Positions 8,397 to 38,385 of a stretch of 44,076 nucleotides of DNA are shown piece by piece. Source of the stretch: Macrostomum lignano (Eukaryota). The position numbers were made by a program, and so were the translations under genes. The stretch covers positions 1 to 44,076 of the forward strand of contig NIVC01002810.1 of assembly GCA_002269645.1 (NCBI GenBank). The letters are read 5' to 3'. Numbering within the stretch: the stretch's first letter is position 1; the number at the start of each line of letters is the position of its first letter. Below the pieces are notes generated by a model, which made no database searches, was not told the DNA's origin, and saw only the letters and a list, made by a program, of their open reading frames with translations.

Positions 8397-8830
8397 ATGT
8401 ATGTGACTTGTCATGCCACATCATCCTAAAAGGCCATAGGAGGTCAGGCATTGTCAGGCTCTTAAAATTAGTAATGATATATTTGTTCATTTATATTTAA
8501 CAATTATTAATTAAGACTAAAATGAGTCAATAAAAGTCAGAAATGTATATAAATTAACAGTAGATTGTACAGTCCAACAGAGCACTCACAGAGTTGCAAT
8601 GAGGGGAGAGAGAGAGAGAGAAAAAAGAGAGAGAGAAAGAGAAAAGAAAGAGAGCCAAGTAGATAAAAACTTTTCCACCATCCATATGTGCTCAAATGAG
8701 TACAGACTAAAAGTGCTTGAGGTCCTGTATATAAAATTGCGTAAACCAATCCTAAATAAGCAACTTGCCAATCATGGTGCCAGTGCCCTCCTTAGAATAT
8801 TCTAGGTGTACACTTGTGCTTATCTCATTT

Positions 8831-8889
<59 letters not shown>

Positions 8890-8890
<1 letters not shown>

Positions 8891-9950
8891 CAACCAATCT
8901 GGGTTTGCTTCCCAAAGGGTTCCATCCCTGTGGGTCATCACGTTGCAAATGCTGCACCTACTCATCACCTACTCTCTCCGCCCAGGGGCTAAAACTGGCT
9001 TCCAGTTTTTTAATCTCTCAGAGCCTATCCTGTGGTATGGCTCCAAAAACTTCATCTATGGCATCTCCTGCAACCAATGCCACCCTGGGAAGATATTCTA
9101 TGTAGGGATGACAAGAAGAACAATGAGAGATAGAATGAACCAACACGGCAAATATTAATAGGAGGGTTGTGACTTTGGGGTCAGAGCACTTTCTCACCCC
9201 CAATCACTCGATTGCAAACTTTGTCTCTATTGCTATCAAACAAGTTCTTAATAACAACAAAATCAAACTTAGGGAAGAAATCTGGATTAAAAAACTGGGG
9301 ACTGACAAACTGCCAGGTACGAATATCAGGGTTGACAATCATCTTCTTCGACCTATCTTATTGGTCCTTCCTTTTCACCCATCTATAGTCTGGCTTGCCA
9401 ACAAGATAGCTAAAAACTTTGATAAGCTACAAAATAAACCAGGCTCCTGCATACTGCCTGCATTTACATGGCAACATAACTTACAGAGCCTCCTGGCTCC
9501 CAATAAGTTCAAGTCTCAGCCAGGAAACCATTGAATAATTTAACCAATATGCTATTTTACCTATAGAACTACAATATTTATTCACTTTGTCATGTATTTT
9601 ATTCAAACTGCTTGATTATATGCACAAATATCAATTTTTATGCTCCCACCCTCAATACTGCATTTTATTTAATCGTACTTCAAAAAAGCAATTTTTTAAT
9701 ATACTAAATATACCATCGCTTAAACTGACTGGTTGAAAGCCTCTGGGACAAGTTAGAGCTAGAATGAACCCAGTTTAAATGTACACCCCTCATATGTACA
9801 GCAGCTCAGCAATTTTATTAGACTGAGAAAACTAATACTTAACAGACCAACTTGCACTGCATGAAACACTGATTTTTGGCCTGACAAAGAGCCCAGAGGC
9901 TCGAAACCGGTAGCCCATATTAAATTAATTAGTCTTTTGATTTTTTAAAC
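8890..9950 (+). pseudogene. Penelope-like element A: degraded Zn-knuckle plus GIY-YIG endonuclease and 3' UTR
   Basis: Across frames: PKGFHPCGSSRCKCC, NFIYGISCNQC...FYVGMTRRTMRDRMNQH, EHFLTPNH, LREEIWIKKLGTDKLPGTN. Contains frameshifts and stops. Confidence 0.85.
9878..9915 (+). ncRNA. Minimal type-I hammerhead ribozyme-like motif (variant core)
   Basis: ggc-CTGACAA-a-GAGCC-caga-GGCTC-GAAA-ccgg-TA-gcc. Stem III region ACCGGT is palindromic. Located in the 3' UTR of a Penelope element. Confidence 0.6.
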
Positions 9951-10127
9951 ATGCCGTGACCTCTCTTCTCTCTCTTTTTCTACCTCTCTCCCCTTATTGC
10001 AACTCTGTGAGCATTCTGTTGGACTGTACAATCTACTGTTAATTTATATACATTTCTGACTTTTATCAACCCATTTTAGTCTTAATTGTTAAATATAAAT
10101 GAACAAAAAAATTGTTACTAATTTTAA

Positions 10128-10165
10128 GAGCCTGACAATGCCTGATGCAAGGCGAAACATGTTGC
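10128..10165 (+). ncRNA. Minimal hammerhead ribozyme-like motif (variant core)
   Basis: gagc-CTGACAA-t-GCCT-gatgca-AGGC-GAAA-catg-TT-gc. Palindromic ACATGT. Stem I is weak. Confidence 0.5.
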
Positions 10166-10307
10166 ATAAAAAAGATTTTGAGTTTATATCTAGGCCTATC
10201 TTATTAGGCCTATTCAAAATATGCTATATCAACATATATATGCCAATTAATTTTGCTTCATATTTTTAAGGGTTAGTCACATTTTACATTTTTGGATTGA
10301 TTGGGTC

Positions 10308-11248
10308 TAGGGATTCCAAAATCCCGACATTTTACAATCCCGGGATTGAATAGTCCCGAAATCCCGATGCTGTTGAAATCCCGGGATTCAAAATCCCGGA
10401 ATCCCGGTGCTTTTGCAATCCCGGGATTAAAAATCCCGGGATTCGATTCCCAAAAAAATCCCGGGATTCAAATCCCGGATTTTTGGCCCCAATCCCGGGA
10501 TCCCGGGATCCCGGGATTGGAATCCCTAAATTGCTAGACGGACTGTGCGGCGTGCCGCGTGCAGTAGTCATGGTCTCGCGACTCTCAGAGTCTCAGGGCC
10601 TTTTCATATTACCAATTCCAGAACCAGAATCGGTTCGGAATTCGAAGAAAAACAGCAGTATAACTATTAAACTCTGTTAATATTTGACTGCCTTAACAGC
10701 CTCACTTAGCACAATTTTTCACTTTCTTCTTGGCGACTGTCATTCAATAATAAAAACTTTATAGCACGTATCTCCCTCTAGTTATGGAGACAAAAAGTTT
10801 ATACTTCACAAATTGGTTCTTGTTCTGGAACCAGAGCAAGCAATATGAAAAGGCCCTCAGTCTCGTCTCGTGGTAGAAAACGAAAAAAAAGTTAAAATTA
10901 TCTATAATTTACAGTTCACATTAACAATTTTTAGCTCAATTAGGACAGGAGCTTTGCAAATGTTTAACGTTTCATTGAGAAACAGCAAAAACAAATAAAT
11001 GTTTTATTATTCAAATAAACGTTTAGACTTTAAATTATCTAATTTAGGCATTGAAAGGTCGTTCTAATCCCGGACCAATCCCGGGATTAAGGCCTTGAAA
11101 TCCCGGGATCCCGATCCCGGTCTTTTGCAATCCCGGGATTAAAAATCCCGGGATTCGATTCCCAAAAAAATCCCGGGATTCAAATCCCGGATTTTTGGCC
11201 CCAATCCCGGGATCCCGGGATCCCGGGATCCCGGGATTGGAATCCCTA
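10308..11248. mobile_element. Non-autonomous hAT-like element, 941 bp, with CCCGGGA(T) subterminal arrays
   Basis: TIRs tagggattccaa / ttggaatcccta. 8-bp TSD attgggtc at 10300-10307 and 11249-11256. Confidence 0.85.
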
Positions 11249-11993
11249 ATTGGGTCATCTCTACATATAAAAATCAAAACTCTGTCTGTCTGTCTCTCTG
11301 TCTGTGTACAATTTTGATCGCTATGGACTCCCGAACCGCTCAACCAAATGACACCAAACTTTACACCCACCCTAAACTTACTACGGAGAATGTCTTAGGC
11401 TACCTTTAAATTTCCTAGACTCAAGTCTTCCTACCTAAAAGTACAAAAAACTTCTCAAAATACGCGATTTTTTCACTAAATCCTCCATAGCGCCGCTCCA
11501 CTTTTACCGATTCTTTTCAAATTTGACACAGACAATCTTAAACTATTTTGGCACAATCGTGTAAAATTTCGAGTCTCAAAGTTAATCCTGAGCGGTGCTG
11601 TGCACTTTTAAAGTTAGGCTGCTTTTTTCAGCGTAGCAACCACCCCAACCTCCGCCCGCCTGCCTCTCTTTCCCGATTCCGATCTGGGCCCAGATGTGTA
11701 AAATGGGTTTCAAAATCGACTAACTTTCAGCTGCCATAAGTTTGCTCCACGTGAAGCGATTGACTTTAAACTTGACACAATTCTTCATTGACTCATTCTC
11801 TATCTAAATGTAAAGTTTCAACTCTGTAACTCAACCGAAAAAGAAACTGTAAGCATGTGAAGTTTTTCAGCTTTTTCTGTTGTTTGTGCCACTCACTCAC
11901 TCATTCCCCCAGAGCCAGACCAAGGGTCAGGCGATAGGGCTGAATGTACATGGCAATGTACAGTGTTTTGGAATAGCTTTGTTTATGGCCTTC

Positions 11994-12912
11994 GAAAATT
12001 TCGAATATTTCGAAATCAAATTTCTTCGTCAGGGCTGCAAGCGAGTGAAGTTTATTTGGCGCGAATTGCCGTCAATATATAAAGGCGATATCGCCAGGGA
12101 GAGACGATCGATAAATTGATGTGCTCAAGCACTTAAAACAGTACGCATGGTCAGTACATTAAAACGAGTCCGAGACTATGAGAAAAGCGGGGGGTGGCTA
12201 AAACTGTACAATTGGGCCTAGACGACCTTTAAGTGTAGAATAAAAATTGCAAAAATAAATGGCGAAATAAATAGGTAAGGTAAATAAAAATAATTATTAA
12301 ATGCTCAGAGCAAAAATGCAGGTGCACCGTACACAGTGTCAGAAAAATGAATAAAAAGCAGAAAATAAATAATCTTAATAAATCGAAATAAAGTCAATGA
12401 AAAATCACAGAGGGGAAAATAGCAGTAAAGGAGCCTTTGTACAGCTGATCTCAATTGGCAGAAGCTGGTTCGAGCTGGCTGTGGCAGAGTAGATCCCGAA
12501 GGCTCCTCCCTTTAGTGAAGGCCGGCAGTACAGGGGCATCGCAGTGCTGTGCCACGCCGTCCCTCACCTTGGCAACCAGGGTGTCTGACCCAGCGCAGTG
12601 CGGCACAATCAGTGGGATCGCCGCATTGTGCAGCACCCCGGCCAGCTCGTTGGCGCCATGTGGGACCAGAGTTTTCAGGACCGCGATGAGTTTGGCCTCC
12701 TGGCGTTGACGTCGTTCATTGGCCTTGGGTCCAGAGCCGTCCCGCGTCCACATTCCGGTGAAGGCAAAGTCCTCGAGACTATGGCCATCGTTGCTGAAGT
12801 GGCGGGCCACCGGAGTGTCGCGTGCGTGCCTGATGTCGCCGACGTGCGCTAGCATGCGGGCCCGGATGCTGTTGACCGTCTCGCCGACGTAGACCGTGCA
12901 GCTGCAGCGATA
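11994..12912 (-). pseudogene. 5'-truncated Penelope-like element C (GIY-YIG endonuclease C-terminal part and 3' UTR)
   Basis: The minus strand reads YRCSCTVYVGETVNSIRARMLAHVGDIRHARDTPVARHFSNDGHS...EAKLIAVLKTLVPHGAN, open to the stop at 12451. Confidence 0.85.
12003..12035 (-). ncRNA. Minimal hammerhead ribozyme motif with canonical core
   Basis: Minus strand: gcc-CTGACGA-a-GAAAT-ttg-ATTTC-GAAA-tat-TC, at the 3' end of Penelope element C. Confidence 0.65.
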
Positions 12913-12988
12913 GGGAGAGAGAAGAGGAAATAGGAGAATGAAGAGGGGAGAGAGTAGAGAGGAGAAGAGAGATGGGAGAGGAGAGATA

Positions 12989-13029
<41 letters not shown>

Positions 13030-13817
13030 AGAGATAAAACAATAAAAGAGATGAAAGAAAAGAGAGAGAGGAAAGGGGAGAGAGGAGAGAGGAAAGAGTA
13101 GAGATGAGAGATGAGAGAGTAGAGGAGAGAGTTAAGAGATGAGAGAAAAGAATAGAGAGGAGAAGGAAGAGACGAGAGAAGAGGGGGAGAGAGGAGAGAG
13201 GAGAGGAGAGAGAAAACGAAAAAGTAGATAGGAGAAAGGAGAGGAGAGAGAAAAGAAGAGGGAAGAGATGAGATAAGAGATATCAAAGAGAAGAAAGATG
13301 AGGGAGGATACGAAAGAAGATGGGAGAGAGGAGAGAGGAGAGGAGAGAGAAAACGAAATAATAGAGAGGAGAGCAGAGAGAAAACGAAAAGTAGAAAGGA
13401 GAGAGGAGAGAGAAAAGAATAGGGAAGAGATGAGGGAAGATACGAGAGGAGAGAGGAGAGAAGAGAGAGGAGAGAGGAGAGACGAGGGACGGGAGAGAAG
13501 AAAGGAAAGAGACGATAGAAATTTTAAAGGATCCAAGGGACATAGGGAGAGTCAGGGAGAGGCCAGAGTTTGCCAATACATGTTTTAGAGTCAGACAGAC
13601 ATTGCCTGGCATTCTGCGGAGCACCCCAGCCAACAATATCAACGTTTGCCTCAAACCCTAATTTTATACGAATGTGCTCCATTTTATGTCTACCTCTATC
13701 CTACTAACTATTAACAAGTTTTTGTTTGTGTATGGCTTTAGATTTCAGAATACATTCAAAAGTAGTTCCGGGGATTGGAATTCCCCGGGTTCAAATTCCG
13801 CGGGTTTCAATAGCTTG

Positions 13818-16800
13818 TCTATACATATAAAAATCAAAACTCTGTCTGTCTGTCTGTCTGTGGACAAATTACTTCGCTATGGACTCCCAAACCGCTTAAC
13901 CAAATGACACCAAACTTTACACCCACCCTAAACTTACTACGGAGAATGTCTTAGGCTACCTTTAAATTTCCTAGACTCAAGTCTTCCTACCTAAAAGTAC
14001 AAAAAACTGCTCAAAATGCGCGATTTTTTCACTAAATCCTCCATAGCGCCGCTCCACTTTTACCAATCCTTTTCAAATTTGACACGAACAATGTTAAACT
14101 ATTTTGACACAATCGTGTAAAATTTCGAGTCCCAAAGTTAATCCTGAACAGCGCTGTGCACTTTTAAAGTTAGGCTGCTTTTTTTCAGCGAGACAGCCAC
14201 CCCAACCTCCGCCTGCCTGCCTCTCTTTCCCGATCTGGGCCCAGATGTGTAAAAGGGGTTTCAAAATTGACTAACTTTCGGCTGCCATAAGTTTGCTCCA
14301 CGTAAAGCGATTGACTTCAAATTTAACACAATTCTTCTTTGACTCATTCTCTGTCTAAATGTAAAGTCTCAACTCTGTATCTCAATCAGGACGGAAACTG
14401 TAAGCATGTGAAGTTTGTCTGCTTTTTCTGTATTTTGCGCCGCTAAATCACTCTCACTCTTCCCCACGCCCAGACGAAGGGTCAGGCGATAGGGCTCAAT
14501 GTACATAGCAAATGTACAGTGTTTTGGAATAACTTTTTAATAGCCTTCTCTGTACCCCCGCGAGTGGAGAGGCGTGGAGAGGAGAGAGTTTAGCCAGAGA
14601 TTCAAACTACTGTCCTCTGTATAGACAAGTCGCAGCAGTTTAACAAGGATGGCAAATCAAGGCGATGTGGGATGGTTTGTAAAAATAGCGAAAAATTAAT
14701 GAATAACTGATTACAATGCAATCCTATTATCCTACTAAATTAGTTACACCATGAAAATTTTAACATTAAGATTCGCATAAGGTACTTTAAAATTTAAATG
14801 GTCTCCTAAGAAATGCGTATTTCCTTGGTTGTTAGACTGCTGCAGACTGTGGTGGTGGAGCTGGAGAATGGAGATACAAAAATTCCTCTCAGGGCTGCTA
14901 ATTGGCCAGAAAGATGACGTGATTAAAGCATGAGAAATGATAACAACCATGATAGTACTATGAAGCAGGGATGTTTTGTTTTTAGAGGGAATGTCTGTTG
15001 TTGTTTTTTGAAGGCTTTAGTTCGCTGTCTATTTGTTATTTGTAAAGAACAAGGATTCTAACCAGATGTCCCCCATCGGGGGGCGAAGATTGCTAGTTTT
15101 TATCTCAAAGGCCAGATAAAGAATCCAGCTCAGGGCTGCGGGCCAGATGAGAGTGAAAAGGAAAAGGAATAGACTATTAGAGAGGGAGGAGGGGCGAGAG
15201 GGGGATAAGAGAAAAGATAGAAGATAACAGGAGAGACGAGGGGGTTGAAGAGAGAGCAGAGAATATGGGACGAAGAAGCGAGAGGAGGGGAGAGAGAAGG
15301 GAGAGGAAATAGTAGAGGTGAGAAGATGAAGAGAGAAGAGGGGAGAGATGAGACAGAGGATCAATCAGAGAGGAGAGTAGAGAAGAGTGAGAAGAGATGA
15401 GAGAACAGAGGTACCTTAAGGTAGATGAGAGAGGATCGAGAGGAGAGATTCGAAAGGATAGAGAAGAGAGGAGATAAGGGGGGGAGAGAGGGGAAGAGAG
15501 AGGAGTGAGAAGAGGAGATAAGAGATGAGTGAGAAGATGAGATAAGAGATAAGAGATAAGAGAGAGAGAGAGTTGAGAAAGAAGAGAGGAGAAAGGAGAG
15601 ATGATAGAGTAAAGGGAAGAGGAGGAGAGAGTGGAGATGACAGATGAAGGAAGAGAGGGCAGAGTGCAGAGAGACGAGAGAAGAGAATATAGAGGGGAGA
15701 GAGTATAGAAGAGGGAAGAGAAGAGAGGAGTAAGGAAAGAGATTAGTCAGAAGAGGGGAAAGAGAAGAGTACACAGTAGAGAGGAGAGTAGAGATGACAG
15801 AAGAGAGAGGGGAATGAGAGAGTGAAGATGAGGGTGAACAGACGATATAAGAGAGGAGAGAGGAGAGTGAGAGAGAAGAGAGAAGAAAAGAGAGGGAGAG
15901 AGTATAGAAGAGAGAAGTGAAGAGACGAGAAGAAAGAAGAAAAGATCGAGTCCTCCTGAGTCAAAAAAGGGGAAAGAGAGGAGTAAAAGGGGAGAGAGGT
16001 GAGAGAACATATGAGAGTAAAGATGAAATATGAGAGAGGGGAGATGAGAGATCAGAAACGAGAGTGAACAGACGAGAGATGGGAGAGTAGAGAAAAAAGG
16101 AGAACTATAAGAAATAAAAGATGAGAGGTAAGTGAGGAGAGAGGAGGGGAAGGGAGAGAATCGAGAGGACATGGGAAATTGGTGAAAAGGACGAGAGAGG
16201 AGAGGAAAGAGGGGAGAGATTAGAGAGAAGAGAGATAGGACAGGAGAGAGCAGAGAGAGATGAGATATAATGCATATGCATATGAGAGATAAGAGATGAG
16301 AGAGAGAGGGGGGAGAGGAGAGAGAGCAGAGAAATGAGAAAAGATAAGAGAGAGAAGATAAAAGAAGAGAAATGAGAGATAAGAGAGCAAAGACGAGAGA
16401 GGAGGTGAGGGAAGAGACGATAGAAGACATGAGAGGAGAGAGTTGAGAGAAGAGAGGAAAAAGGAGAGAGTAGAGATAAGGAAAGTGTTGAGAGAGGGTA
16501 GAGTAAGGAGTGAGAAGAGAGGTGAGGGAAGAGAGAGTAGAGAGCAGAGGGAAGAGAGAGTAGAGAGCAGAGAGAAATGAGAAGAGATAAAAAAGGAAAA
16601 AGGAGATATGAGAGACCAGAGAGAAGAGAGGAGAGGAGATAGAAAAGAATAGAAGGGAGAGGGAAGAGACGAGAGAGGAGAGAGGACAGAGGAGAGAAGA
16701 AAGAAAAGATAACAGGAGACAGAGAGAGAAGAGACGAGACAGAAGATAGGAAACAGAAAAGAAGATGGAAGGATGCAAAGGACATAGGGAGAGGCAGAGG

Positions 16801-17025
16801 TACAGGCCTGAGTTTACCTAACATTCTGCGCAGCACCCCAGCCAACAATATAAATGTTTGCCTCAAATCCTAATTTTACATGAATGTACAACATTTTATG
16901 TTTAACTCTATCCTAACTATTACCAAGTTTTATTTGAATTTGACCTCAGATTTTAGAATACATGCAAAAATAATTCCGGGGATTGGAATTCCCTGGGTTC
17001 AAAATCCGCGGGTTTCAACAGCTTG
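13818..17025 (+). mobile_element. Non-autonomous Helitron-like unit 2 (uninterrupted reference copy)
   Basis: Same 5' end (tctatacatataaaaatcaaaactctgtc) and 3' end (cgcgggtttcaacagcttg), directly abutting units 1 and 3. Contains a ~1.6-kb GA-rich tract. Confidence 0.8.
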
Positions 17026-17055
17026 TCTCTACATATAAAAATCAAAACTCTGTCT

Positions 17056-20000
17056 CAGCGCGCAGGAGCTGCGTGTAAGGGTTAAAAAAATCTAGTACAA
17101 AGCGACCTGCTTTATTGTGTTCACCATTACCTGGTAAGTATTTTTCTAGAGTTTTTAAAAAATCTGCCGATGTCAAGCTCCACAATCAGTAAATTATTTA
17201 ATTAGCATTAATTGCATGGCGAAAGGTCTAAACAAGTCATGATTTTTATCCAAGGACCATTGATTTTTTAAATTAAAGGCAAAATACACACCCATGAGTG
17301 CGTACCCCCAAGCCCCAAGGCACAGTGTACATGCATGACGAATAGCGAAAGCTGAGGCGCCGTACACCCCTAAGTGCGCATGATCAACCTCTATCAGTGT
17401 AGCGTCAGTTGCGTCACCGAAAAAATGGAGTGCATTTAGCGTCACTCTCAGACAGGCAGATTTTTTATTTTTGAGCTATATAAATGATTAATTTAGCATA
17501 AATCAGCTCATCTCAGCATTTAGGAATTGAAAAGCCTTGAACTGAACACCACCATGCCAAACTACTCAAAATCTCACGAAGAGAACCGGCTGAAGGTCTG
17601 CCTTGTGTGCTTTAAGCGCGGGTCAGGCATGCAGCGCATTGGCAAAGCAGCTCTACCTCGCATCCAGCGGTACTTTTATGCAAACTACGATTTGAAGAAC
17701 GAGTTTCTCCCAGCTGCTCTGTGTGCTCGATGCCAGGGTCTGCTGCTGGATATTGAACGGGGGAATCGAACTTCTGAAGCTCTTCCTGCCCCTTTTGATT
17801 TTTCAAAAGTCGTACCGACAAAGGAAACAAGGGGCCACCCGAAGTGCAGCTGCTGTCTCTGTGAGATTGCCAGAGAAAGTCCAATCGGCAAAGGACTCGG
17901 CACCTGGAAGCCGGAGCCGCATCGCCTTGGCAGACCGAAAACCGATTCGCCAAACAAGGAGGTGCCACCTGCTCGTCCCATCACCATCTGCCAGAGATGT
18001 CACTCCACCATTGGCAGGGGTCTTAGCCACACCTGTACGCAATCTCGCTGGCTAAATAGCATCTGCTCTGAGCTGTCACGTGATCCGCGTGGTTCAGAAA
18101 TTCATGCTAGTGACGTCCTCAAAGCCAAGTTAACAGACGCAGGTGGCGATTCGCCTATTCGGCTGGCAACTCGAGGCCGCTCAATCACGCTAAGCGTGTC
18201 CGCTCAGAGTAGCAGGTGCTCCGCGGGTGCATTTGGTGACATAGCAGTGCCGGCTAGTGAGATTGCCAGGATGCAGGATGCGATCGGTTTGAGTGGTCGG
18301 CAAACCAGACAGGCGGCCCAGTTCTTCCGTGAGTGGAAGGGTCGCAGTTCGATCGAGCCAAACCTCCTGCATCGCCTGGCAGAATTGAATAGCGAGTTGG
18401 ATCCATTTTATGCAACAGAGTCAGTCCAAGTCCGTTGCAGCACGGGCGAATTTGAAACGCGGACTGTTGTGTTCTGCTCCAACGTCTCTGGCTTGGTGGG
18501 CTACGTGCTGGCACGGCGGAGAATGGATCCTGATCCTGGCAGCTTCCTGCTTAAGATTGGTATTGATGGAGGACGCGGCTTTTTTAAAGTTTGCATGACA
18601 TTGGTCCGGTCCGGGGAGCAGTCATCTATTCTACTAGGCGGTGTCACCGAGGCCGGCAGCAGCCCTTTTGCCGAAGGTGGTGTAAAGAAGCTAATAATTA
18701 TCGCAGCAGTTGAAAAAGTACCGGAGTACTATGAGAACGTGCAAACTGTGCTCAATCTGCTGAACCTAGAAGACGTGTCTTTCTGCAGCTCCGTGGACAT
18801 GAAACTTGCAAATGTGCTTCTTGGACTGCAGAGCGCCAGCAGCGCCCATCCCTGCCCGTGGTGCGAGACGCCTCGAAAAGAGTTCGCCAATCCCCATCGC
18901 AGTGTCAGATTGCGGACTTTCGGCTCCCCAAGCTGCCAAGCTGCCCAGTATCAGCGCATCGAGGGGCAACGAAGCTCAAAGCCATCAGGAGAGCCATTCC
19001 ACAACTGCATCAGGCAACCACTGCTGAATTGGCCAGACAGTTCAAACACGCTAGAAGCCGTGCCACCCATGGAGCTCCACCTGCTGCTAGGCCTTGTCAA
19101 CAGGCTGTACGACGAGCTTGAGCAGCGCCTGACAGCATTGGGTCCCGACGGAGTCCGTGCTGCACAGTGGGCTGAGGCTCTTCACGTACGGCGCTCACCG
19201 TATCATGGCAGCCAGTTCAATGGCAATGAGTGCGACCGACTGCTTGGTGGAGTCGACAGCCTGCGCCAGATCCTCGCTGACCACGCTGCCTTCAGCGGAG
19301 TGCCTGTCGCCCATGCATTCAGCTGCCTGCGAGCTGTCCAGCAGAAGTGCTTCGGCCAACAACTGCTTGAAGGCTACGATACAGCAGTCAAAGAGTTCGA
19401 GGCGGCATACCACGCTCTGGCCATCAACATCACTCCGAAGGCCCATGCCCTCATTGACCACGTGCCGCAGTTTTTGGAAGCGATGGCAGTACAATCTGGG
19501 TGTCGCCGAGGCCTTGGGTTTTGGTCTGAGCAGGCAATGGAGTCGGCACATCGCGACTTCAGCGACATGTGGAGTCAACGGTTCAAGGTGGATGCAACTC
19601 ATCCGGAGTATGCTCGGCGTTTGCTCAGGTGCATCACGGTGTACAGCTCTCGGCATCTGTAAAATGGGCTACTGTGCTGTAAGCAGTTCTGTTGAAGGTG
19701 CAATAATATCCGAGTTACTTTAAAACCGATTGGTGCACCAGAATTCTTGTTTTGATAAATGGGGGACAAATTCAGGTTTTTTGTTTAATTTTTGGTGAGG
19801 TTACAGTTGGAGCTCTCTATTTTGAGGTCTGGTCATAGACAAATCAACCCCTGAAACTTCACAGCAAGGCTTCTCATGTCATGCAGTGTTTTAGACTCTC
19901 ATGGCACGAAATAGTCTATGGACATTCTGCCACAAATTTTCTCTCGGCTTTACTCCAACTGTGGCTACACCAAGAACTAAAATTATTTTCTACAATTTGA

Positions 20001-20423
20001 AAAGACATAAATTTGTCGCCTATCTGTATTTCTTACTGTTTTTTAGTTATACTTTTCTATTACTATGTATAACTTACTTTCTATTTATTTAACACTATAA
20101 ATTGTTTCCAATTCTAGGCTATGCACACGAATTTATACAATAAACTGTCACAAAAATTATATAATACACTATACATAACATGCATGTAATAGTGCAACGA
20201 CCCTAGCTTAAAATATCAATGGTCCTTGGATAAAAATCATGACTTGTTTAGACCTTTCGCCATGCAATTAATGCTAATTAAATAATTTACTGATTGTGGA
20301 GCTTGACATCGGCAGATTTTTTAAAAACTCAAGAAAAATACTTACCAGGTAATGGTGAACACAATAAAGCAGGTCGCTTTGTACTAGATTTTTTTAACCC
20401 TTACACGCAGCTCCTGCGCGCTG
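17056..20423 (+). mobile_element. Autonomous-looking Chapaev-type (RAG1-related) DNA transposon, ~3.37 kb
   Basis: 216-bp TIRs at 17056-17271 and 20208-20423 with only 2 mismatches seen. One intact transposase ORF. Interrupts the TGTC microsatellite of Helitron unit 3. Confidence 0.9.
17554..19662 (+). CDS. Chapaev/RAG1-like DDE transposase, 702 aa from the first ATG
   Basis: N-terminal H-x7-C-x2-C (HEENRLKVCLVC), LPAALCARC, HPKCSCCLC and CQRC-x8-HTC zinc motifs. Core motifs IGIDGG, SVDMKLANVLLGLQSASSAHPCPWCE, PPMELHLLLG, ITPKAHALIDHVPQF and WSEQAMESAH parallel the RAG1 core. No stops. Confidence 0.88.
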   Translation: MPNYSKSHEENRLKVCLVCFKRGSGMQRIGKAALPRIQRYFYANYDLKNEFLPAALCARCQGLLLDIERGNRTSEALPAPFDFSKVVPTKETRGHPKCSCCLCEIARESPIGKGLGTWKPEPHRLGRPKTDSPNKEVPPARPITICQRCHSTIGRGLSHTCTQSRWLNSICSELSRDPRGSEIHASDVLKAKLTDAGGDSPIRLATRGRSITLSVSAQSSRCSAGAFGDIAVPASEIARMQDAIGLSGRQTRQAAQFFREWKGRSSIEPNLLHRLAELNSELDPFYATESVQVRCSTGEFETRTVVFCSNVSGLVGYVLARRRMDPDPGSFLLKIGIDGGRGFFKVCMTLVRSGEQSSILLGGVTEAGSSPFAEGGVKKLIIIAAVEKVPEYYENVQTVLNLLNLEDVSFCSSVDMKLANVLLGLQSASSAHPCPWCETPRKEFANPHRSVRLRTFGSPSCQAAQYQRIEGQRSSKPSGEPFHNCIRQPLLNWPDSSNTLEAVPPMELHLLLGLVNRLYDELEQRLTALGPDGVRAAQWAEALHVRRSPYHGSQFNGNECDRLLGGVDSLRQILADHAAFSGVPVAHAFSCLRAVQQKCFGQQLLEGYDTAVKEFEAAYHALAINITPKAHALIDHVPQFLEAMAVQSGCRRGLGFWSEQAMESAHRDFSDMWSQRFKVDATHPEYARRLLRCITVYSSRHL

Positions 20424-21125
20424 TAGTCTGTGTGTCTGTCTGTCTGTGGACAATTTTGATCGCTATGGACTCCCAAACCACTCAACCAAATGACACCAAA
20501 TTTTACACCCACCCTAAAATTGCTACGGAGAATGTCTTGGGCTACTTTTAAATTTCCTAAATTTGAGTCTTCCCACCTAAAAGTGCCAAAAACTGCTCAA
20601 AATGCGAGATTTTTTTACTAAATCCTCCATAGCACCGCTCCACTTCTACCGATCCTCTTCAAATTTGACACAATCAATTTTCAACTATTTTGACACAATC
20701 GTGTAGAATTTCGAATCTGAAAGTTAATCCTGAACGGCGCTGTGCACTTTTAAAGTTTGGCTTTTTTTTCAGCGAGGCAGCCACCCCAACCTCCGCCTGC
20801 CTGCCTCTCTTTCCCGATCTGGGCAAATGGTGTGAATATGTTTTAAAATGCCTAACTTTCGGCTGCCATAGTTTTGCTCCACGTGAAGCGATTGACTTCA
20901 AATTTGACAAAATTCTTTATTGACTCATTCTCTGCCTACATGTAAAGTCTCAACTCTGTATCTCAATCAGGACAGAAACTGTAAGCATGTGAAGTTTGTC
21001 TGCTTTTTCTGTTGTTTGTGCCGCTCACTCACTCATTCCCCAGCCCAGACGAAGGGTCAGGCGATAGGGCTCAATGTACTTAGCGAATGTACAGTGTTTT
21101 GGAATAACTTTTTAATAGCCTTCTC

Positions 21126-22334
21126 GGGTCTATGAAATTTGCTTGCGAGAAGTTTGCTTGCCGAAGTTTGCTTGCGGGACTTTTGCTTGCGGAAATTTGC
21201 TTGCCGAAGTCTGCTTGCCGAATTTTGCTTGCGGAATTTTGCTTGCCGAAGTCTGCTTGCCGAACTTTGCTTGCGGAATTTTGCTTGCCGAAGTCTGCTT
21301 GCCGAACTTTGCTTGCGGAATTTTGCCTGCCGAAGTTTGCTTGCCGAGCTTTGCTTGCCGAACTTTGCTTGCCGAACTTTGCTTGCCGAATTTTGCTTGC
21401 AGGAAATTTGCTTGCTGCACATAAGCTTGCCGAAGTTTGCTTGCAGGAAATTTGCTTGCGAGGTTTGCCAGCCAAAGTTTTGCGGAACCTTAAAGAAACC
21501 TATTTTTGAGCTCTTGTATTTCTAATTTTCATTTTCTAAGATTCGTGGAAGTCGCCTATAATAGTGTTATAATTTTGTATGAGGATATGGCGGATTATTA
21601 ACTACATTTTATATACTGTACAAAAATATTATTAGTATATGCATTATTATACATTAACATCACTGCAATTATCATACCTGCTCAATCGTGCTGAAATCAG
21701 GAACTACAAAGATTTATACTGTTACCGATCCCTATCTTCTACCTATACTAAATCTCTAAGCAATCTATATACTACATTCTTAGAATGAAACTCTATAAGC
21801 CTAGTTTGAAAACTTAGTGTCAAGTCAGTTTACGTCGACCCTGATAAGAATCCACTTGCAAAGCATCTGTAGTAAGTAATAATTGACTGACCAACTTTAC
21901 AAGCAATCAAAACAAGCAAGCAAACAAGAAAATAATTCTGCAAGTTAAAACCTTGCGATTGTGTGATTGCAATTTTCTAGAAAGCAGACATCAAAATTTC
22001 GCAAGCAAAGTTCGGCAAGCAAAATTCCTGCAAGCAAAGTTCGGCAAGCAAACTTCGGCAGGCAAAGTTCCTGCAAGCAAATTTCCTGCAAGCAAAGTTC
22101 GGTAAGCAAAGTTCGGCAAGCAAAGTTCGGCAAGCAAAGTTCGGCAGGCAAAATTCCGCAAGCAAAGTTCGGCAAGCAAACTTCGACAAGCAAAGTTCGG
22201 CAAGCAAAGTTCGGCAAGCAAAGTTCGGCAAGCAAAATTCCGCAAGCAAAGCTCGGCAAGCAAAGTTCGGCAAGCAAAATTCCTGCAAGCAAAGTTCGGC
22301 AAGCAAACTTCCCGCAAGCAAACGTCGTACTCCC
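21126..22334. mobile_element. Mutator-like foldback non-autonomous element, 1209 bp
   Basis: 9-bp TSD agccttctc (21117-21125, 22335-22343). The empty site is visible in unit 2 at ~14530. Termini GGG...tttgcttgcg / cgcaagcaaa...CCC. The inverted arms are built of ~14-bp subunits (gccgaagtttgctt). Confidence 0.8.
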
Positions 22335-23880
22335 AGCCTTCTCGGCACCCCGCGCGTGGAAAGGCAACGTTTGACAGTTTAGCGAGAGATTCAAGCCACT
22401 GCAGAGACAAGTCTGCAGCAGTTTAACAGTGGATGGATGGCAAATCAAGGCGATGTGGGGATGGTTTGTAAAAGTAGCGATAAATTAATAAATAACTGAT
22501 TACAATGCAATCCTACTAAAAGTTACACCACGAAAATTTTAACATTAATATCGCATAAAGTACCTCAAAATTTAAATGGTTCCTAAGAAATGCGTATTTC
22601 CTTGGTTGTTAGACTGCTGCAGACTGGTGATGGAGCTGGAGATACACAAATTCCTCTCAGGGCTGCAAATTGGCCAGAAAGATGACGTGATTAAAGCATG
22701 AGAAATGATAACAACCATGATAGTACTACGTCCCACAAACTGGCTTTCGAAGCAGGGATCGGCAGATTTTTACCTGAAAGGTAAAATCCAGCTTTTTATC
22801 CAGCTCATGGCTGCGGGCCAGATGAGAGTGAAAAGGAGAAGGAATAGACTACTAGAAAGGGAGGAGGGGCGAGAGGGGGGTAAGAAAAAAGATAGACGAT
22901 AATAGGAGAGACGAGGGGTAAGGAGAGAGCAGACAGCAGAGTATATGGGAGGAAGAAGCAAGAGGAGGGGAGAGAGGAGGGAGAGGAAATAGTAAAGGTG
23001 AGAAGAGGGAGAGAGAAGAGGGGAGAGATGAGACAGAGGATCGATGGGAGAGGAGAGTAGAGAAGAGTGAGAAGAGAGTAGAGATGAGAGAGCAGATAGA
23101 AGATGAGAGAGGAGAGATTAGAGAGGGTAGGGAAGAGAGTAGATAAAAGGGGGAGAGAGGAGTGAGAAGAGAGTTGAGAAAGAAGAGTGGGAAGGGAAGA
23201 GTAAAGGAAAGAGGAGGAGAGATGAAAGAGATGAGATTATAGAGATGGGAGAGATGAAAGGAAAGATGAGAGAGTAGAGATGAGAGATGAAGGAAGAGAG
23301 AGCAGAGTGCAGAGAGACGGGTTTAGAGAATAGAGGGGAAAGAGAAGAGTACACAGGAGAGAGGAGAGTAGAGATGACAGAAGAGAAAGGGGGATGAGAG
23401 AGCAAAGGTGAGAGTGAACAGACGATATATGAGAGTGGAGAGAGAAGAGAGAAGACAAGAGAGGGAGAGAGTATAGAAGAGGGAAGAGAAGAGAAGAGAA
23501 GAAAGGAGAAAGAAAAGAGAGGAGTCAAAAGAGGGGAAAAAGAAGAGTACAGAGGAGAGAGGTGAGAGAACACACGCGTATAAGAGAGTAATGACAGATG
23601 AGAGAGGGGAGATAAGAGAGCAGAAACAAGAGTGAACAGACGAGAGATGGGAGAGTAAAGAGAAAAGAGGAGAGGTGAGACAAAGGGAGAGAGAAGTGAG
23701 TGAGGAAGAGGAGGGGAGGGGAGGGGAGAGAATCGAGAGGACAGGGAAAGAGGGGAAAGGATGAGAGAGGAGAGGAAAGAGGGGAAAGGATGAGAGAGGA
23801 GAGGAAAGAGGGGAAAGGATGAAAGTGGAGAGGAAAGAGGGGAAAGATTAGAGAGGAGAAGACAGATGAGACAGGAGAGA

Positions 23881-23921
<41 letters not shown>

Positions 23922-24728
23922 CAAGCAGAGAATAATGGGAAGAGATAAGAGAGAAAAGAGGTGAGGAAAGAGATGAGAGGAGAGAGTGGAGAGAGGAGAG
24001 GAGAGAGTTGAGAGAAGAGATGAGAAAGGGGAGAGGAGTAGATGAAGGAAGTGTTGAAAGGGTAGAGTAAGGACTGAGAAGAGAAGGAAGAGACAAGAGA
24101 CGAGAGAGAAGAGAGGAAACAGAAGAGAAGATAGAAATTTCAAAGGATCCAAGGGGCATAGGGAGACAGAGAGGCAGATGCAGAGGCAGAGGCCAGCCAG
24201 ACTGCCAGAGTTTGCCTGACATTCTGCGCAGCACCCTAGCCAACAATATCAATGTTTGCCTCAAATCCTAATTTTACACAAATGTGTACTCTATTTTATG
24301 TTTAACTCTTTCGTAACTATTAACAAGTTTTTGTTTGAGTTAGACCTCAGATTTTAGAATACATGCAAAAATAGTTCCGGAGATTGAAATTCCCCGGGTT
24401 CAAAATCAGCGGGTTTCAACAGCTTGTTATATTTATATAAAAATATTTTTGCATTATTATTTTAAGAGAGCTATGTGGCACTATGTCTTAAAGGGATATG
24501 GTCATTTCATCTCCTGTCATTTTGTCTGCCAGCAGACAAAATGACTATTCAGTGGTGGGTATAATAATTGTTTATTTTAGCATGATTTGACATATTACAT
24601 ATTTAATGATTAGTTAATTAATTTGTGCATAATTTAGTTGCCAATATTCAAAGCAAAGGAAAATAATTTGTTATGATGCTTTGCTCATATGTTTAACTTT
24701 TATAGACAACAGCCTATCAGATCTATAA

Positions 24729-26067
24729 ATGAGCAGTGTAGAAAAAGAAGGTCTACTATCAGCCACTGCTGGTGCTGGCAGTGGTTTACCAACCAAAGAA
24801 ACCCAAGGGCAGCCTGCTTCAGTGCCAGTGCAGCACAATGAACTCTACCGCGAAATTGACTCTGACAGTGAGCAGCAGCCCTGGTGGAAGGCGAACTTTC
24901 TTATCACAACACAGCGTGTCACTTTTGGCACCTGGGATGGCGTGTTTACCTCCTGCGTGATGAACATCTTCGGCACTCTGGTATTTCTGCGCGCTGGCTG
25001 GCTGGTGGGTCAGGCTGGCCTTCCACTGGCGCTCCTGGCCTGCTGTCTGACTGCCACTGTTGGCCTTCTCACCGCACTTAGTGCCATCGGTGTCTGCCTC
25101 CAATGCGGCGTTGAGTCTGGCGGAGTGCACAGCCTGCTTGGCCGCGTGCTTGGTGACAAATTTGGCTCCGCCATTGGCCTGGTTTATTGCCTCGGTCAAG
25201 CTATTGGCGTCTCTCTGTGCACTGCTGGCCTTGGGGAGTCCGTTGCCAACATGTTTGGTATTGTAGGCAGCGACTGGGCCTCTCGCGCTTTTGCCTTAGT
25301 CTTGACCGCCACTCTGCTTGCCGTCGCTGGTGCCGGCGTCAAGTGGGTCATCCGCTTGCAGCTGCTCCTGCTGGCGGTTGTCGTGCTAGCTGTTTTCGAC
25401 TTCGTCATTGGATCTGGTTTTCGCGGCAGTGTCACAAATGACAACGGCGTCCTTGGTTACGGCAGTGGCGCAGTTGGAAACAATACTCGGCCAGAGTTCT
25501 CCGAGGGAGAGACTTTCCTGACTGTGCTAGGCGTGTTCTTTCCCACCATCACAGGCGTCCTGGCTGGTGTCAACATGGCTGGGGATCTTGCCGATCCGCT
25601 ACGCAGCATTCCAACTGGAACTATGTCAGCCATCGGAGCCAGCTTCGTTTTGTACGTTACCTTCGTGATTGTCCTTGGTGCCACCTGCTCCAGAGTAGCG
25701 CTTCAGTCCGACTATCTGATTGGTCAGCAGGTATCTCTGCTAGGTCCCGTGTTCCTGTGTGGCCTATACGTGAGCTCCTTGAGTTCGGCGCTGGGTGGCC
25801 TGACAGCTGCTTCTCGGGTGCTGTCAGCCATCGCTCACAGCACGCAGCTACCCGGTTTGCGTCACCTGTCAGTGCACAAATTCAGCGCCCAGGTGCCGAT
25901 CTACGCCCTGATTGCGGTAGCCGTTGTCACAATTGCTTTCAACATAGCCGGCAGCCTCAATATCCTGGCGCCCATTGTAGCCATGCCGTTTTTAGCCACG
26001 TACGCCACAGTTTGCTACGCTAACTTTGCCCTTGAGATGAGTAAAAAAATTGGCAACCAACACATAG
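24729..26067 (+). CDS. SLC12A8: SLC12A8/CCC9-like cation-chloride cotransporter family member, coding exon 1
   Basis: PWW...FGTWDGVFTSCVMNIFGTLVFLRAGWLVG and VFFPTITGVLAGVNMAGDL motifs, multiple TM segments. Donor AG|GTGAGT at 26067/26068, phase 1. Confidence 0.9.
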
Positions 26068-26353
26068 GTGAGTAGTTGTTTTTATGCAGCAAAATTGTAT
26101 GTTTCCATTCATATTTAACCATCAACTAGTTCATGTTAAAATAATTTTTATGATTTCTCTACTATTTAGAAATAATATTTGCCGGAAAAAATTGGTGCCA
26201 GCAATCTTAACTACTAATAATTGTAGCGTAGGGGTAAGGAATCAGTTCGTGATAAAAGTTCCTTAAAGAGCTCTTATATTTAGCTGCGAGAGAGAATCGA
26301 AAGCATGCCTATCATGCTGATTACGCAACAACTTGTTTCTCCCCACGTGGCAG

Positions 26354-26865
26354 GTCGCAACAGCAAGTCCGATCAGCAAGCTGGGACTGGCGGTGACTTG
26401 GACACGCTGTTTCCTGACGCTGGCCCTGCTTCAAATCGCGGGCCAGACGAGGCGCCGCTCAAAGGCGAAGTCTCAACTGTCTGGTCTCGCCTGGCCAACG
26501 GCTGGCTGTCTCTGTTCTCCTGCTGCGCCTGCCTAGCTGTCATGCTGGCCATCAACTGGATCTACGCTCTGGTCACCAGCCTGCTGGTTGTTGGCCTGCA
26601 CGTCTACGTTGGTCACTTCTGCCCCGGCGCCAGTCCGGGCGTTGCTGACTTTTCTCTCATCGGCTGGATTCAGTCCCTGCGCCGCGGTGGCGGCGGCCAC
26701 GGCGGCAGCGCTGGCGGTTTCGGCATAGTGTCCGCTAGACCTCCGCCAAAGCCCGGCACCGAGGGCGCGCTGCTGACACAGGACAACGAGGATTACGCTG
26801 AGCGGGGCAAGTACCACCAGAGCCGACAGCTGGACCCGCGGCTTGTGCCAGATGATCTCGAGTGA
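26354..26865 (+). CDS. SLC12A8: SLC12A8-like coding exon 2
   Basis: Acceptor tttctccccacgtggCAG|gt is phase-compatible with exon 1. Encodes WLSLFSCCACLAVMLAINWIYALV and LTQDNEDYAERGKYH, matching the SLC12A8 C-terminus. The joined protein is ~616 aa. Confidence 0.8.
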
Positions 26866-38124: not shown

Positions 38125-38385
38125 ATTCGACTTTATAATTAGGCAGCTATGCAAACCGAGGTATCTTGTTGTTTTTTAAGGCTTACACATCATGAGCTTA
38201 ATAAACGAGGTTATGTAACAATATACATAAAATTTAAGGTTTGCAAGTCTCGCAGACACAAATGGCTATTCTAAAACATACGGTTTTGGACATTGAACCA
38301 AGACTCAAATTCGTAATAGTTTTTCGATGTGGATGCCATACATGTATAACAGAAAAAACGACAGCAAAACCTGGCTGCAATATTA

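What the first reader, a model, noticed from the sequence alone, without database searches (positions are those of the whole stretch)
17054..17092. Transposon ends mimic a V(D)J 23-RSS (heptamer, 23-bp spacer, nonamer)
Extending each TIR by 2 bp gives left CTCAGCG (17054-17060) and right TACAGCG (reverse complement of 20419-20425). Each is one change from CACAGCG, which matches the RSS heptamer CACAGTG at 6/7. Exactly 23 bp further in, both ends read AAAAAAATC (17084-17092; 20387-20395 reverse complement), 7/9 identical to the nonamer ACAAAAACC. A symmetric 23/23 RSS-like end on a RAG1-related element lacking RAG2 would bear on RSS origins. Caveat: A-runs are common here, and CACAGCG is reconstructed, not observed.
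Basis: partly seen in the sequence, partly recalled or inferred. Interest (0 to 1): 0.7.

Follow-up and report, generated by a model that had tools for sequence, protein, structure and literature searches.

The report
RSS-like ends of a flatworm RAG1-fold transposon
The ends of a Macrostomum lignano DNA transposon, whose enzyme has the RAG1 fold, carry the heptamer / 23-bp spacer / A-rich nonamer layout long known from Transib transposons; relatives share the layout, so it is inherited rather than chance, but this copy has lost the essential CAC at both tips.

Summary
All the quoted strings are at the stated coordinates. The "heptamer", however, starts 2 bp outside the perfect inverted repeat (17056-17271 / 20208-20423). 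Those two bases differ between the ends (CT vs TA), so neither end has an intact CAC.

The inner motif AAAAAAATC is 7/9 to the RSS nonamer. It is also 9/9 to the published Transib TIR consensus (CACAATG-23-AAAAAAATC, Kapitonov & Jurka 2005).

The element (about 17054-20426) is a single-ORF autonomous transposon of Macrostomum lignano. Its 702/711-aa transposase has no Pfam hit. A family profile hits RAG1 (E 1e-5), and an AlphaFold model (pLDDT 89) matches only RAG1/RAG1L structures (E 1e-13).

An N-terminal NZD/Chapa-type zinc finger, weak DUF1280 hits in relatives and the absence of RAG2L point to a Chapaev-like lineage, not a RAGL or canonical Transib.

Seven related families were compared. 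All have true CAC termini. Four have an A-rich nonamer at 22-24 bp and five have AAAATC about 105 bp inside. A scan for this signature predicted three further termini, and one was confirmed by an independent copy.

The resemblance is therefore real and inherited, but RSS-like ends are already known for Transib. This is a new member, with one modest extension: the layout, plus a conserved GRP(K/R) motif, reaches into Chapaev-like elements.

The parts
17049..17053 (.). Candidate left target-site duplication TCTGT
   Evidence: Identical to 20427-20431. It is valid only if the element is 17054-20426. The right flank is (TCTG)n-like low complexity, so a chance match is not excluded.
17054..17060 (+). 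Left heptamer-like terminus CTCAGCG (5/7 to CACAGTG; CAC replaced by CTC)
   Evidence: MAFFT aligns it in register with CACAC/CACAG of relatives.
17056..17271 (+). Left arm of the gap-free terminal inverted repeat (216 nt)
   Evidence: There are 2 mismatches to the right arm, at 17148 and 17265.
17061..17083 (+). 23-bp spacer
   Evidence: Direct count. Its sequence is not conserved between families, apart from a shared A at position 14 from the end (17067) and an A in 5 of 6 families at position 15.
17084..17092 (+). Proximal nonamer-like motif AAAAAAATC
   Evidence: It is 9/9 to the Transib TIR consensus nonamer and 7/9 to the RSS nonamer.
17156..17165 (+). Distal copy of the motif, TAAAAAATCT (AAAATC at position 106 from the end)
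   Evidence: AAAATC lies at positions 103-109 in one or both arms of 5 of 7 families; the second arm is at 95 in L028 and has no copy in L044.
17554..19662 (+). Transposase gene, 702 aa from the ATG (711 aa from the upstream TTG at 17527), no intron
   Evidence: It is 100% identical to M. lignano BOX15_Mlig010790g22. AlphaFold pLDDT is 89.4 and the fold matches RAG1.
17575..17862 (+). N-terminal NZD/Chapa-type double zinc finger (H17, C25xxC28, C66xxC69, C107xC109xxC112)
   Evidence: The ligands are invariant or nearly so in 57 relatives. Their spacing matches the RAG1 NZD ligands H102/C110/C113/C175/C178/H206/C210/C213. Pfam zf-AD hits 13 of 57 relatives.
17929..17940 (+). GRPK motif (AT-hook-like; GRP conserved in the family)
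   Evidence: G is conserved in 45/57, R in 36/57 and P in 50/57 relatives. It lies in a low-confidence (disordered) segment of the model. The GRPR/K motif of the RAG1 NBD contacts the A/T part of the nonamer.
18565..19542 (+). Catalytic core: D347 (18565-18567), D424 (18796-18798), C443xxC446 (18853-18864), H640x4H645 (19444-19461), E672 (19540-19542)
   Evidence: D347, D424, C446, H640, H645 and E672 are invariant in 57 relatives and C443 is conserved in 56 of 57. D424 through E672 align with RAG1 D708 / CxxC / HxxxxH / E962.
20312..20321 (-). Distal motif copy in the right arm
20387..20395 (-). Proximal nonamer-like motif AAAAAAATC in the right arm
20208..20423 (-). Right arm of the gap-free terminal inverted repeat
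20419..20426 (-). Right heptamer-like terminus: TACAGCG if read from 20425, CTACAGCG if read from 20426
20427..20431 (.). Candidate right target-site duplication TCTGT

Best explanation
The flagged 39 bp is the outer part of the long (216-218 bp) terminal inverted repeat of an autonomous cut-and-paste DNA transposon of the flatworm Macrostomum lignano.

Its only gene encodes a DDE transposase with these parts:
- the RAG1 fold;
- an N-terminal NZD/Chapa-type zinc finger;
- a GRPK motif;
- the C(2)C and H(4)H zinc sites;
- no RAG2-like partner.

This places it in a very large Chapaev-like lineage of the CMC/Transib clade.

The ends of this lineage are organised like Transib ends and 23-RSSs. They have a CAC-initiated heptamer where cleavage occurs, then a non-conserved 22-24 bp spacer, then an A-rich nonamer (A6-7 T C/G). 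There is also a second AAAATCY site about 105 bp inside.

Inferred mechanism:
1. The GRP(K/R) motif and the helical domain after it bind the A-tract motifs and position the RNase-H domain on the heptamer.
2. Cleavage proceeds by nick and hairpin, as in RAG and Transib.
3. Integration duplicates a few bases of the target (5 bp in the M. lignano sister family).

The resemblance to an RSS is therefore inherited family architecture, not mimicry peculiar to this copy. This particular copy has an intact ORF and nearly identical arms, but CAC is degenerate at both tips (CTC and TAC/CTAC). It may be unable to be cut.
For: Shown:
- The host is M. lignano and there is a single ORF.
- The family is large: 7,537 representatives at E<=1e-3.
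- D347/D424/E672, C446 and H640/H645 are invariant and C443 is conserved in 56 of 57 relatives. D424 through E672 align to the RAG1 catalytic and zinc residues at E 1.4e-5.
- All 44 Foldseek hits with E<=1e-3 are RAG1 or amphioxus RAG1L, over 560-670 columns.
- The zinc-ligand spacing equals that of the RAG1 NZD / type I Chapa domain.
- DUF1280, the Pfam family for Chapaev transposases, hits 12 of 57 relatives, and zf-AD hits 13 of 57.
- Relatives have true CAC ends: CACACAT with a 5-bp TSD TCTCC, CACAGGT, CACACGT, CACAGTT, CACGGTG and CACACTA.
- The best match to AAAAAAATC falls at spacer 22-24 in 4 of 6 families with both ends defined. P is about 1e-3 for 3 or more of the 5 other families, using a conservative background.
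- AAAATC lies at 103-109 in 5 of 7 families, against a background of 8e-4 per position.
- A CAC + nonamer + distal-motif scan recovered known ends and predicted three new ones. The one in L039 was confirmed, because an independent contig (L045) diverges exactly there.
- The Transib consensus is CACAATG-23-AAAAAAATC.
- GRP is conserved in the family. The family without a proximal nonamer has RGPQP in its place.

Inferred, not shown: binding of the GRPK/helical region to the motif, hairpin chemistry, and immobility of this copy.
Against: - Neither end of the window copy has CAC.
- The gap-free repeat starts at CAGCGCG, which also fits the clade's 5'-CA...TG-3' rule and would make the spacer 21 bp.
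- The TSD TCTGT lies in low-complexity sequence. No second copy or empty site could be examined.
- Two of seven families (L037, L013) lack the proximal nonamer at 22-24 bp, so the spacing is not universal.
- The distal site is better conserved than the proximal one.
- TSD length varies between families (3, 4 and 5 bp).
- The GRPK motif is separated from the helical domain by a CCHC knuckle, unlike the RAG1 NBD. Homology of the two GRP motifs is unproven.
- The window protein itself has no DUF1280 or RAG1 Pfam hit. No reference Chapaev sequence was available for a phylogeny.
- Three of the supporting termini were found by the signature itself, which is an ascertainment bias.
Confidence: 0.7

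Rival explanations
1. Chance resemblance. An A-run in an AT-rich subterminal region happens to lie 23 bp from an arbitrarily chosen start point, and the 'heptamer' is wishful reconstruction.
For: - The heptamer is 5/7 at each end and has no CAC.
- Loose heptamer + nonamer pairs at RSS-like spacings occur 16 times in the window.
- A-runs are over-represented here: 11 exact AAAAAAATC against 1.55 expected.
- Within TIR arms the >=7/9 rate is 1.6% per position.
Against: - The match to the independent, published Transib consensus nonamer is exact (9/9) and at the same spacer.
- The same layout appears in families only about 30-49% identical in protein, whose spacers are otherwise unrelated.
- A prediction made from the signature was confirmed.
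Confidence: 0.08
2. The A-tract is simply one of several subterminal transposase-binding repeats, as in CACTA/En-Spm elements. It has no RSS-like requirement for a fixed 23-bp spacer. The real conserved recognition site is the AAAATCY motif about 105 bp inside the end.
For: - There are two AAAAAATCT copies per arm in the window.
- L037 has copies at 104, 147 and 165 but none at about 31, and L013 has its A-run at position 13.
- The L039 family carries tandem CATACAAAACG subterminal repeats.
- The distal site is present in more families than the proximal one.
Against: Where the proximal copy exists, its A/T junction falls within a 2-bp range (positions 36/37 to 37/38) in five or six divergent families. 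Freely placed repeats would not be expected to do this.
Confidence: 0.25
3. The true termini are the ends of the gap-free repeat (5'-CAGCGCG...CGCGCTG-3'). On this view CT and TA are flanking DNA, there is no heptamer homolog, and the spacer is 21 bp.
For: - The inverted repeat is perfect only from 17056 and 20423.
- 5'-CA...TG-3' is the common rule in the CMC/Transib clade.
- The two outer bases differ between the ends.
Against: - With these ends no TSD of 2-5 bp exists, whereas ends at 17054/20426 give a perfect 5-bp TSD, as in the sister family.
- All seven relatives start CAC, not CAG.
- The register starting at 17054/20425 aligns ACAG and the downstream GA with relatives better (7/16 against 5/16 by my own count).
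Confidence: 0.25

Closest known systems
Transib transposons (for example Drosophila Transib1-5 and Helicoverpa zea HzTransib)
   Same: - A single-gene element with no RAG2.
- A DDE core with C(2)C and H(4)H sites and the RAG1 fold.
- TIR layout of heptamer, 23-bp variable spacer and AAAAAAATC; the window's inner motif is identical to that consensus.
- Mostly symmetric 23/23 ends.
- A 5-bp TSD in the M. lignano sister family.
- Few autonomous copies per genome.
   Different: - Neither the single sequence nor the profiles hit HzTransib chains in the PDB, and none is among the 44 significant fold matches.
- The protein carries an N-terminal Chapa/NZD-type zinc finger, which canonical Transib lacks.
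- Relatives make 3- and 4-bp TSDs.
- The TIRs are long (216 bp), with a second conserved site about 105 bp inside.
Chapaev / Chapaev3 transposons (CMC superfamily)
   Same: - An N-terminal Chapa-type zinc finger, a distant RAG1-like core and C(2)C / H(3-4)H motifs.
- CAC...GTG termini in relatives, and 3-4 bp TSDs in two of them.
- An animal host range.
- Weak DUF1280 matches.
   Different: - I found no open paper describing an RSS-like heptamer-spacer-nonamer layout for Chapaev ends.
- The M. lignano members show or suggest 5-bp TSDs.
- Membership was not tested against Repbase reference sequences.
RAGL transposons (ProtoRAG/BbeRAGL-B, PflRAGL-A) and vertebrate RAG1 with its RSSs
   Same: - The RAG1 fold over the whole core.
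- The NZD-like ligand pattern.
[quoted passage not shown]
- A CAC heptamer in relatives.
   Different: - There is no RAG2L gene, no Pfam RAG1 match and only 12-14% identity.
- There is no CTT CCGHC clamp motif at the C-terminus; this rests on reading the sequence.
- The ends are symmetric rather than 12/23.
- A CCHC knuckle lies between the GRP motif and the helical domain.

Membership tests
V(D)J 23-RSS (as a sequence pattern) | Heptamer positions 1-3 = CAC | tested here: not met
   The window ends read CTC (17054-17056) and TAC/CTA (reverse complement of 20423-20426). Relatives do have CAC.
V(D)J 23-RSS (as a sequence pattern) | A-rich nonamer with A at positions 5 and 6, located 23+/-1 bp from the heptamer | tested here: met
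   AAAAAAATC lies at 17084-17092, 23 bp after 17060. It is 7/9 to ACAAAAACC and positions 5 and 6 are A.
Transib superfamily (canonical) | TIR consensus CACAATG - 23 bp - AAAAAAATC | tested here: met
   The nonamer matches 9/9 at spacer 23 and the heptamer 4/7 (CTCAGCG or TACAGCG against CACAATG). The consensus is quoted.
Transib superfamily (canonical) | 5-bp target-site duplication | tested here: inconclusive
   TCTGT/TCTGT is present if the ends are 17054/20426, but it lies in low-complexity sequence. The sister family L001 has a clean TCTCC. L013 shows 3 bp and L028 shows 4 bp.
Transib superfamily (canonical) | Transposase recognisably similar in sequence to Transib transposases, with no extra N-terminal domain | tested here: not met
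   There is no hit to HzTransib chains with a single sequence or with profiles, nor among significant fold hits. A Chapa/NZD-type zinc finger is present.
Chapaev (CMC) | N-terminal Chapa zinc-finger domain (ZFa C4 plus ZFb with one N-terminal and three C-terminal ligands) | tested here: met
   H17, C25, C28, C66, C69, C107, C109 and C112 are conserved in 53-57 of 57 relatives. The H-x7-CxxC spacing is as in the RAG1 NZD. zf-AD hits 13 of 57 relatives. The evidence is the ligand pattern only; no structural superposition was done.
Chapaev (CMC) | [quoted passage not shown] | tested here: met
   D424, C443xxC446, H640x4H645 and E672 are conserved in 56-57 of 57 relatives (C443 in 56, the rest in all 57). 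The rule is quoted.
Chapaev (CMC) | 5'-CAC...GTG-3' termini and a 3-4 bp TSD | tested here: inconclusive
   All seven relatives have CAC. L013 has a 3-bp TSD and L028 a 4-bp TSD. The window copy lacks CAC, and the M. lignano lineage points to 5 bp.
Chapaev (CMC) | Match to Pfam DUF1280 (the Chapaev transposase family) or to Repbase Chapaev references | tested here: inconclusive
   The window protein has no hit. Twelve of 57 relatives hit DUF1280, with a best E of 6.4e-7; the one hit whose score was seen had 19.2 bits against a cut-off of 25.
RAGL transposon | Convergent RAG1L and RAG2L genes between the TIRs | tested here: not met
   There is only one long ORF in 17054-20426.
RAGL transposon | RAG1L protein matching Pfam RAG1 (PF12940) | tested here: not met
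   There is no RAG1 hit for the window protein or for any of the 57 relatives.

The most novel reading that the evidence does not exclude
The heptamer / ~23-bp spacer / A-rich nonamer end, read by a GRP(K/R)-type DNA-binding module, is not a Transib/RAG invention. On this reading it was already present in the common ancestor of Chapaev-like, Transib and RAG transposases. That ancestor would also have carried the NZD/Chapa zinc finger. The huge Chapaev-like family would then serve as an outgroup for reconstructing how RSS recognition evolved, including the repeated loss of the nonamer together with the GRP motif.
Probability: 0.25. Interest if true: 0.65.

Novelty: new member of a known kind. 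Interest (0 to 1): 0.4.

Why it matters
RSS-like transposon ends are the classic argument that V(D)J recombination descends from a transposon. That argument was made for Transib in 2005, so this finding does not open the question.

Three things are added here:
1. A flatworm element with a RAG1 fold shows the same end layout. It also has an NZD/Chapa-type zinc finger, which canonical Transib lacks.
2. The layout recurs across a very large, mostly unannotated family seen in marine metagenomes.
3. It co-occurs with a conserved GRP(K/R) motif. That is the feature which in RAG1 reads the nonamer.

If the layout holds up in a systematic survey, nonamer-type recognition would be older than the Transib/RAG branch. 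It would also offer many natural 'experiments', with the nonamer and GRP motif gained or lost, for testing models of RSS evolution.

As a single locus the finding is an ordinary, probably crippled, transposon copy.

Tried and rejected
- Pfam and PDB sequence searches with the single protein or the 6-sequence profile gave nothing useful.
- The first AlphaFold run, on 6 sequences, was too poor to use (pLDDT 53.6).
- A second homologous-protein run with the 57-sequence alignment returned only the same six proteins.
- A third run, with what I wrongly took for exon 1 of the neighbouring gene, found nothing.
- The empty-site test failed.
  - I reconstructed the spliced 616-aa neighbour gene (24729-26865, intron 26068-26353) in order to fetch homeologous contigs.
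- The public contig NIVC01000691.1 turned out to be the same insertion in another haplotype or assembly. It differs at 8 positions but has identical tips, so it is not an independent copy.
- No other copy of the TIR exists in the window.
- Many metagenomic contigs stop inside the TIR and give no terminus: L004, L009, L010, L016, L019, L041, L042 and L043.
- TSDs on metagenomic contigs (L037, L044) do not match. This is probably because assemblers join flanks of different copies, so those TSDs were not used.
- I considered a canonical Transib and a RAGL transposon, and rejected both for the reasons given in the membership table.
- I considered that CACACATGG in L009 marks an end. I rejected this because the inverted repeat continues 41 nt beyond it on both sides.
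Full report
**Observation.**
- CTCAGCG lies at 17054-17060.
- TACAGCG is the reverse complement of 20419-20425.
- AAAAAAATC lies at 17084-17092 and, on the minus strand, at 20387-20395.

The gap-free inverted repeat is 17056-17271 / 20208-20423, 216 nt with two mismatches. The first two heptamer bases therefore lie outside it and differ between the ends (CT against TA). Each heptamer is 5/7 to CACAGTG, and neither has the essential CAC. Because the two arms are copies of one repeat, the symmetric 23/23 arrangement is one observation, not two.

A 5-bp direct repeat TCTGT flanks the element if its ends are 17054 and 20426. That adds one base on the right (CTACAGCG). The right flank is also (TCTG)n-like, so this TSD is not decisive.

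**Chance.** These are the background rates in the window.
- A >=7/9 match to the RSS nonamer occurs at 2e-3 per position.
- A >=5/7 match to the heptamer occurs at 1.2e-2 per position.
- Exact AAAAAAATC occurs at 1.2e-4 per position (11 sites against 1.55 expected from shuffles).
- Loose heptamer plus nonamer at exactly 23 bp occurs only twice, consistent with the two arms (the script printed the count, not the sites). With spacers 11-13 or 22-24 it occurs 16 times.

On this locus alone the resemblance is only suggestive.

**What the element is.**
- The only long ORF (17527/17554-19662, +) is 100% identical to a hypothetical protein of Macrostomum lignano. There is no second gene, hence no RAG2-like partner.
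- The protein has no Pfam family and no PDB sequence match. An exhaustive profile search nevertheless finds 7,537 cluster representatives at E<=1e-3. Those checked came from short marine-metagenome contigs.
- In an alignment of 57 relatives, D347, D424, E672, C446, H640 and H645 are invariant and C443 is conserved in 56 of 57. So are the N-terminal ligands H17, C25, C28, C66, C69, C107, C109 and C112, and a CCHC knuckle at 155-170.
- The profile of that alignment hits zebrafish and mouse RAG1 and amphioxus RAG1L (E 1.4e-5 to 1.6e-4). The alignment pairs D424 with RAG1 D708, CxxC with C727/C730, HxxxxH with H937/H942, and E672 with E962. The mouse numbering comes from my own knowledge of RAG1.
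- An AlphaFold model built on the 57-sequence alignment has mean pLDDT 89.4. All 44 of its PDB fold matches with E<=1e-3 are RAG1 or BbRAG1L, with E down to 9e-14 over 560-670 columns. The next match is Hermes at 6e-3.
- Targets that include the nonamer-binding domain (NBD) align over roughly 70-110 more columns than targets without it. This suggests an NBD-like region in the query, but it is my inference from the table.

**Which family.** The N-terminal ligand pattern is H-x7-CxxC ... CxxC ... CxCxxC. It is the pattern of the RAG1 NZD and the type I Chapa domain. The literature says this domain occurs in Chapaev and RAG1/RAG1L but not in canonical Transib.

Pfam zf-AD hits 13 of 57 relatives. 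DUF1280, which is equated with Chapaev transposases, hits 12 of 57; the one hit whose score was seen fell below the cut-off. No HzTransib chain is found by any search, and no member hits Pfam RAG1.

I therefore file the element as Chapaev-like within the CMC/Transib ('CMCT') clade. That clade shares C(2)C and H(3-4)H motifs, 5'-CA..TG-3' ends and 2-5 bp TSDs. The placement was not tested against Repbase references.

**Ends of relatives.**

| Family (locus) | Terminus | TSD / status |
|---|---|---|
| M. lignano sister family, 49% protein identity (L001-L003) | CACACATG | clean 5-bp TSD TCTCC |
| L013 | CACACGTG | 3 bp |
| L028 | CACAGGT | 4 bp |
| L037, end defined by four different flanks | CACAGTTG | not usable |
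| L044 | CACGGTG | not usable |

In an ungapped comparison of the six families with both ends defined, four have their best match to AAAAAAATC at spacer 22-24.
- The window matches 9/9 at spacer 23.
- L028 matches 9/9 and 8/9 at spacer 22.
- L044 (GAAAAAATG) matches 7/9 at spacer 23.
- L001 matches 7/9 at spacer 24.

L037 and L013 do not show this. With the TIR arms themselves as background, three or more of the five other families would do so by chance with P of about 1e-3.

MAFFT also exposed, unprompted, an invariant AAAATC block. It lies 103-109 bp from the tip in five of seven families, against a background of 8e-4 per position. The window has two AAAAAATCT copies per arm, at positions 31 and 104.

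A scan for CAC plus nonamer at 22-24 bp plus AAAATC at 95-115 bp covered 4,932 CAC sites. It recovered the known ends and predicted right ends in three further loci.
- L005: CACGGTT-23-AAAAAATAC.
- L017: CACTGTG-23-AAAAAAATG.
- L039: CACACTA followed by A9TG.

An independent contig of the L039 family (L045) loses identity exactly at the predicted CAC. The layout is therefore a conserved, though not universal, feature of the family.

**Comparison with what is known.** Kapitonov and Jurka (2005) described the Transib TIR consensus as CACAATG, a variable 23-bp spacer and AAAAAAATC. They reported that most families are symmetric 23/23, and they proposed this as the origin of RSSs. The window's inner motif is identical to that consensus.

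I found no open paper that describes such a layout for Chapaev. The Repbase Reports that describe Chapaev were not searchable.

In RAG1 and in PflRAG1L-A, a GRPR/K motif at the start of the nonamer-binding domain contacts the A/T part of the nonamer. The motif is found alongside A/T-rich nonamers in RAG1 and PflRAG1L-A, whereas BbeRAGL-B lacks both. The window protein has GRPK at residues 135-138, in a disordered basic stretch. GRP is conserved in 36-50 of 57 relatives.

The family without a proximal nonamer (P0011/L037) has RGPQP at this site. L017 has RGRPR, L044 has RGRPS, and L013 has GKP. This is a lead from very few cases, not a result. A CCHC knuckle separates the motif from the helices, unlike in RAG1.

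**Mechanism proposed.**
- Shown: the anatomy of the ends, the fold, the catalytic and zinc residues, and the conservation of the end layout.
- Inferred: the GRPK/helical region binds the A-tract sites. The RNase-H domain nicks at the heptamer and forms a hairpin on the flank, as RAG and Transib do. Integration duplicates 5 bp in the M. lignano lineage.

The window copy is young: its arms differ at 2 of 216 positions and its ORF is intact. Its tips read CTC and TAC/CTAC, so it may not be cleavable. Alternatively, the true ends are CAGCGCG. Only further copies or an empty site can settle this.

The public contig NIVC01000691.1 carries the same insertion with 8 substitutions and identical tips.

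**Verdict.** The feature is a new member of a known kind. It carries one modestly novel extension: an RSS23/Transib-type end plus a GRP motif in a Chapaev-like, NZD-bearing lineage. That extension deserves a systematic survey.

Noticed in passing
window 16857-20705 versus L034 (NIVC01000691.1) 9304-13152; flanks window 8046-14097 and 22866-22877: The window is another haplotype or assembly version of the public contig. It carries the same transposon insertion with 8 substitutions. The flanks differ by kb-sized insertions and deletions: window 10307-14097 is extra, and L034 1272-4300 and 15259-16824 are extra.
   Followed up: partly
window 10300-10530, 11060-11240 and 16975-17022: There are dense clusters of the palindromic motif AATCCCGGGATT (period about 40 bp). 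They look like subterminal repeats of another, unidentified mobile element. A degenerate patch lies about 30-80 bp (16975-17022) left of the transposon's left end.
   Followed up: no
window 12947-13511, 16194-16762, 22961-24038: Purine-rich (GAGAGG)n-type satellites lie on both sides of the element. They give extreme GC and AT skew (up to 0.69) and spurious long Ser/Leu-rich ORFs on the minus strand.
   Followed up: no
window 21134-21480 and 22001-22322: Two arrays of a 14-bp unit (GAAGTTTGCTTGCC and its complement) lie in inverted orientation about 520 bp apart. Together they form a large palindromic structure about 700 bp right of the element.
   Followed up: no
window 1286-1972; 29076-30005; 37555-38118; 38379-39284: There are several high-identity minisatellites: 228 bp x3 (100% identical), 30 bp x31, 27 bp x21 and 25 bp x36. 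The first carries AAAAAAATC once per unit.
   Followed up: no
window 24729-26865: This is an amino-acid permease (Pfam AA_permease) gene of 616 aa. A single 286-nt GT-AG intron at 26068-26353 is the only one-intron solution that gives the annotated length.
   Followed up: partly
L039 1-130 and 3320-3422 (P0009/P0155 family): The subterminal regions carry tandem CATACAAAACG units, which contain an ACAAAAC core. They begin about 165 bp inside the confirmed CACACTA terminus.
   Followed up: partly
Foldseek result for model m607525779656: No Helicoverpa zea Transib chain appears among the 44 significant PDB fold matches, although RAG1 and amphioxus RAG1L do. I have no explanation for this.
   Followed up: no
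L037/L035/L036/L038 termini: All four distinct flanks of the CACAGTTG end have a C immediately before the CAC. This is either a target preference or the true end lies one base further out.
   Followed up: no
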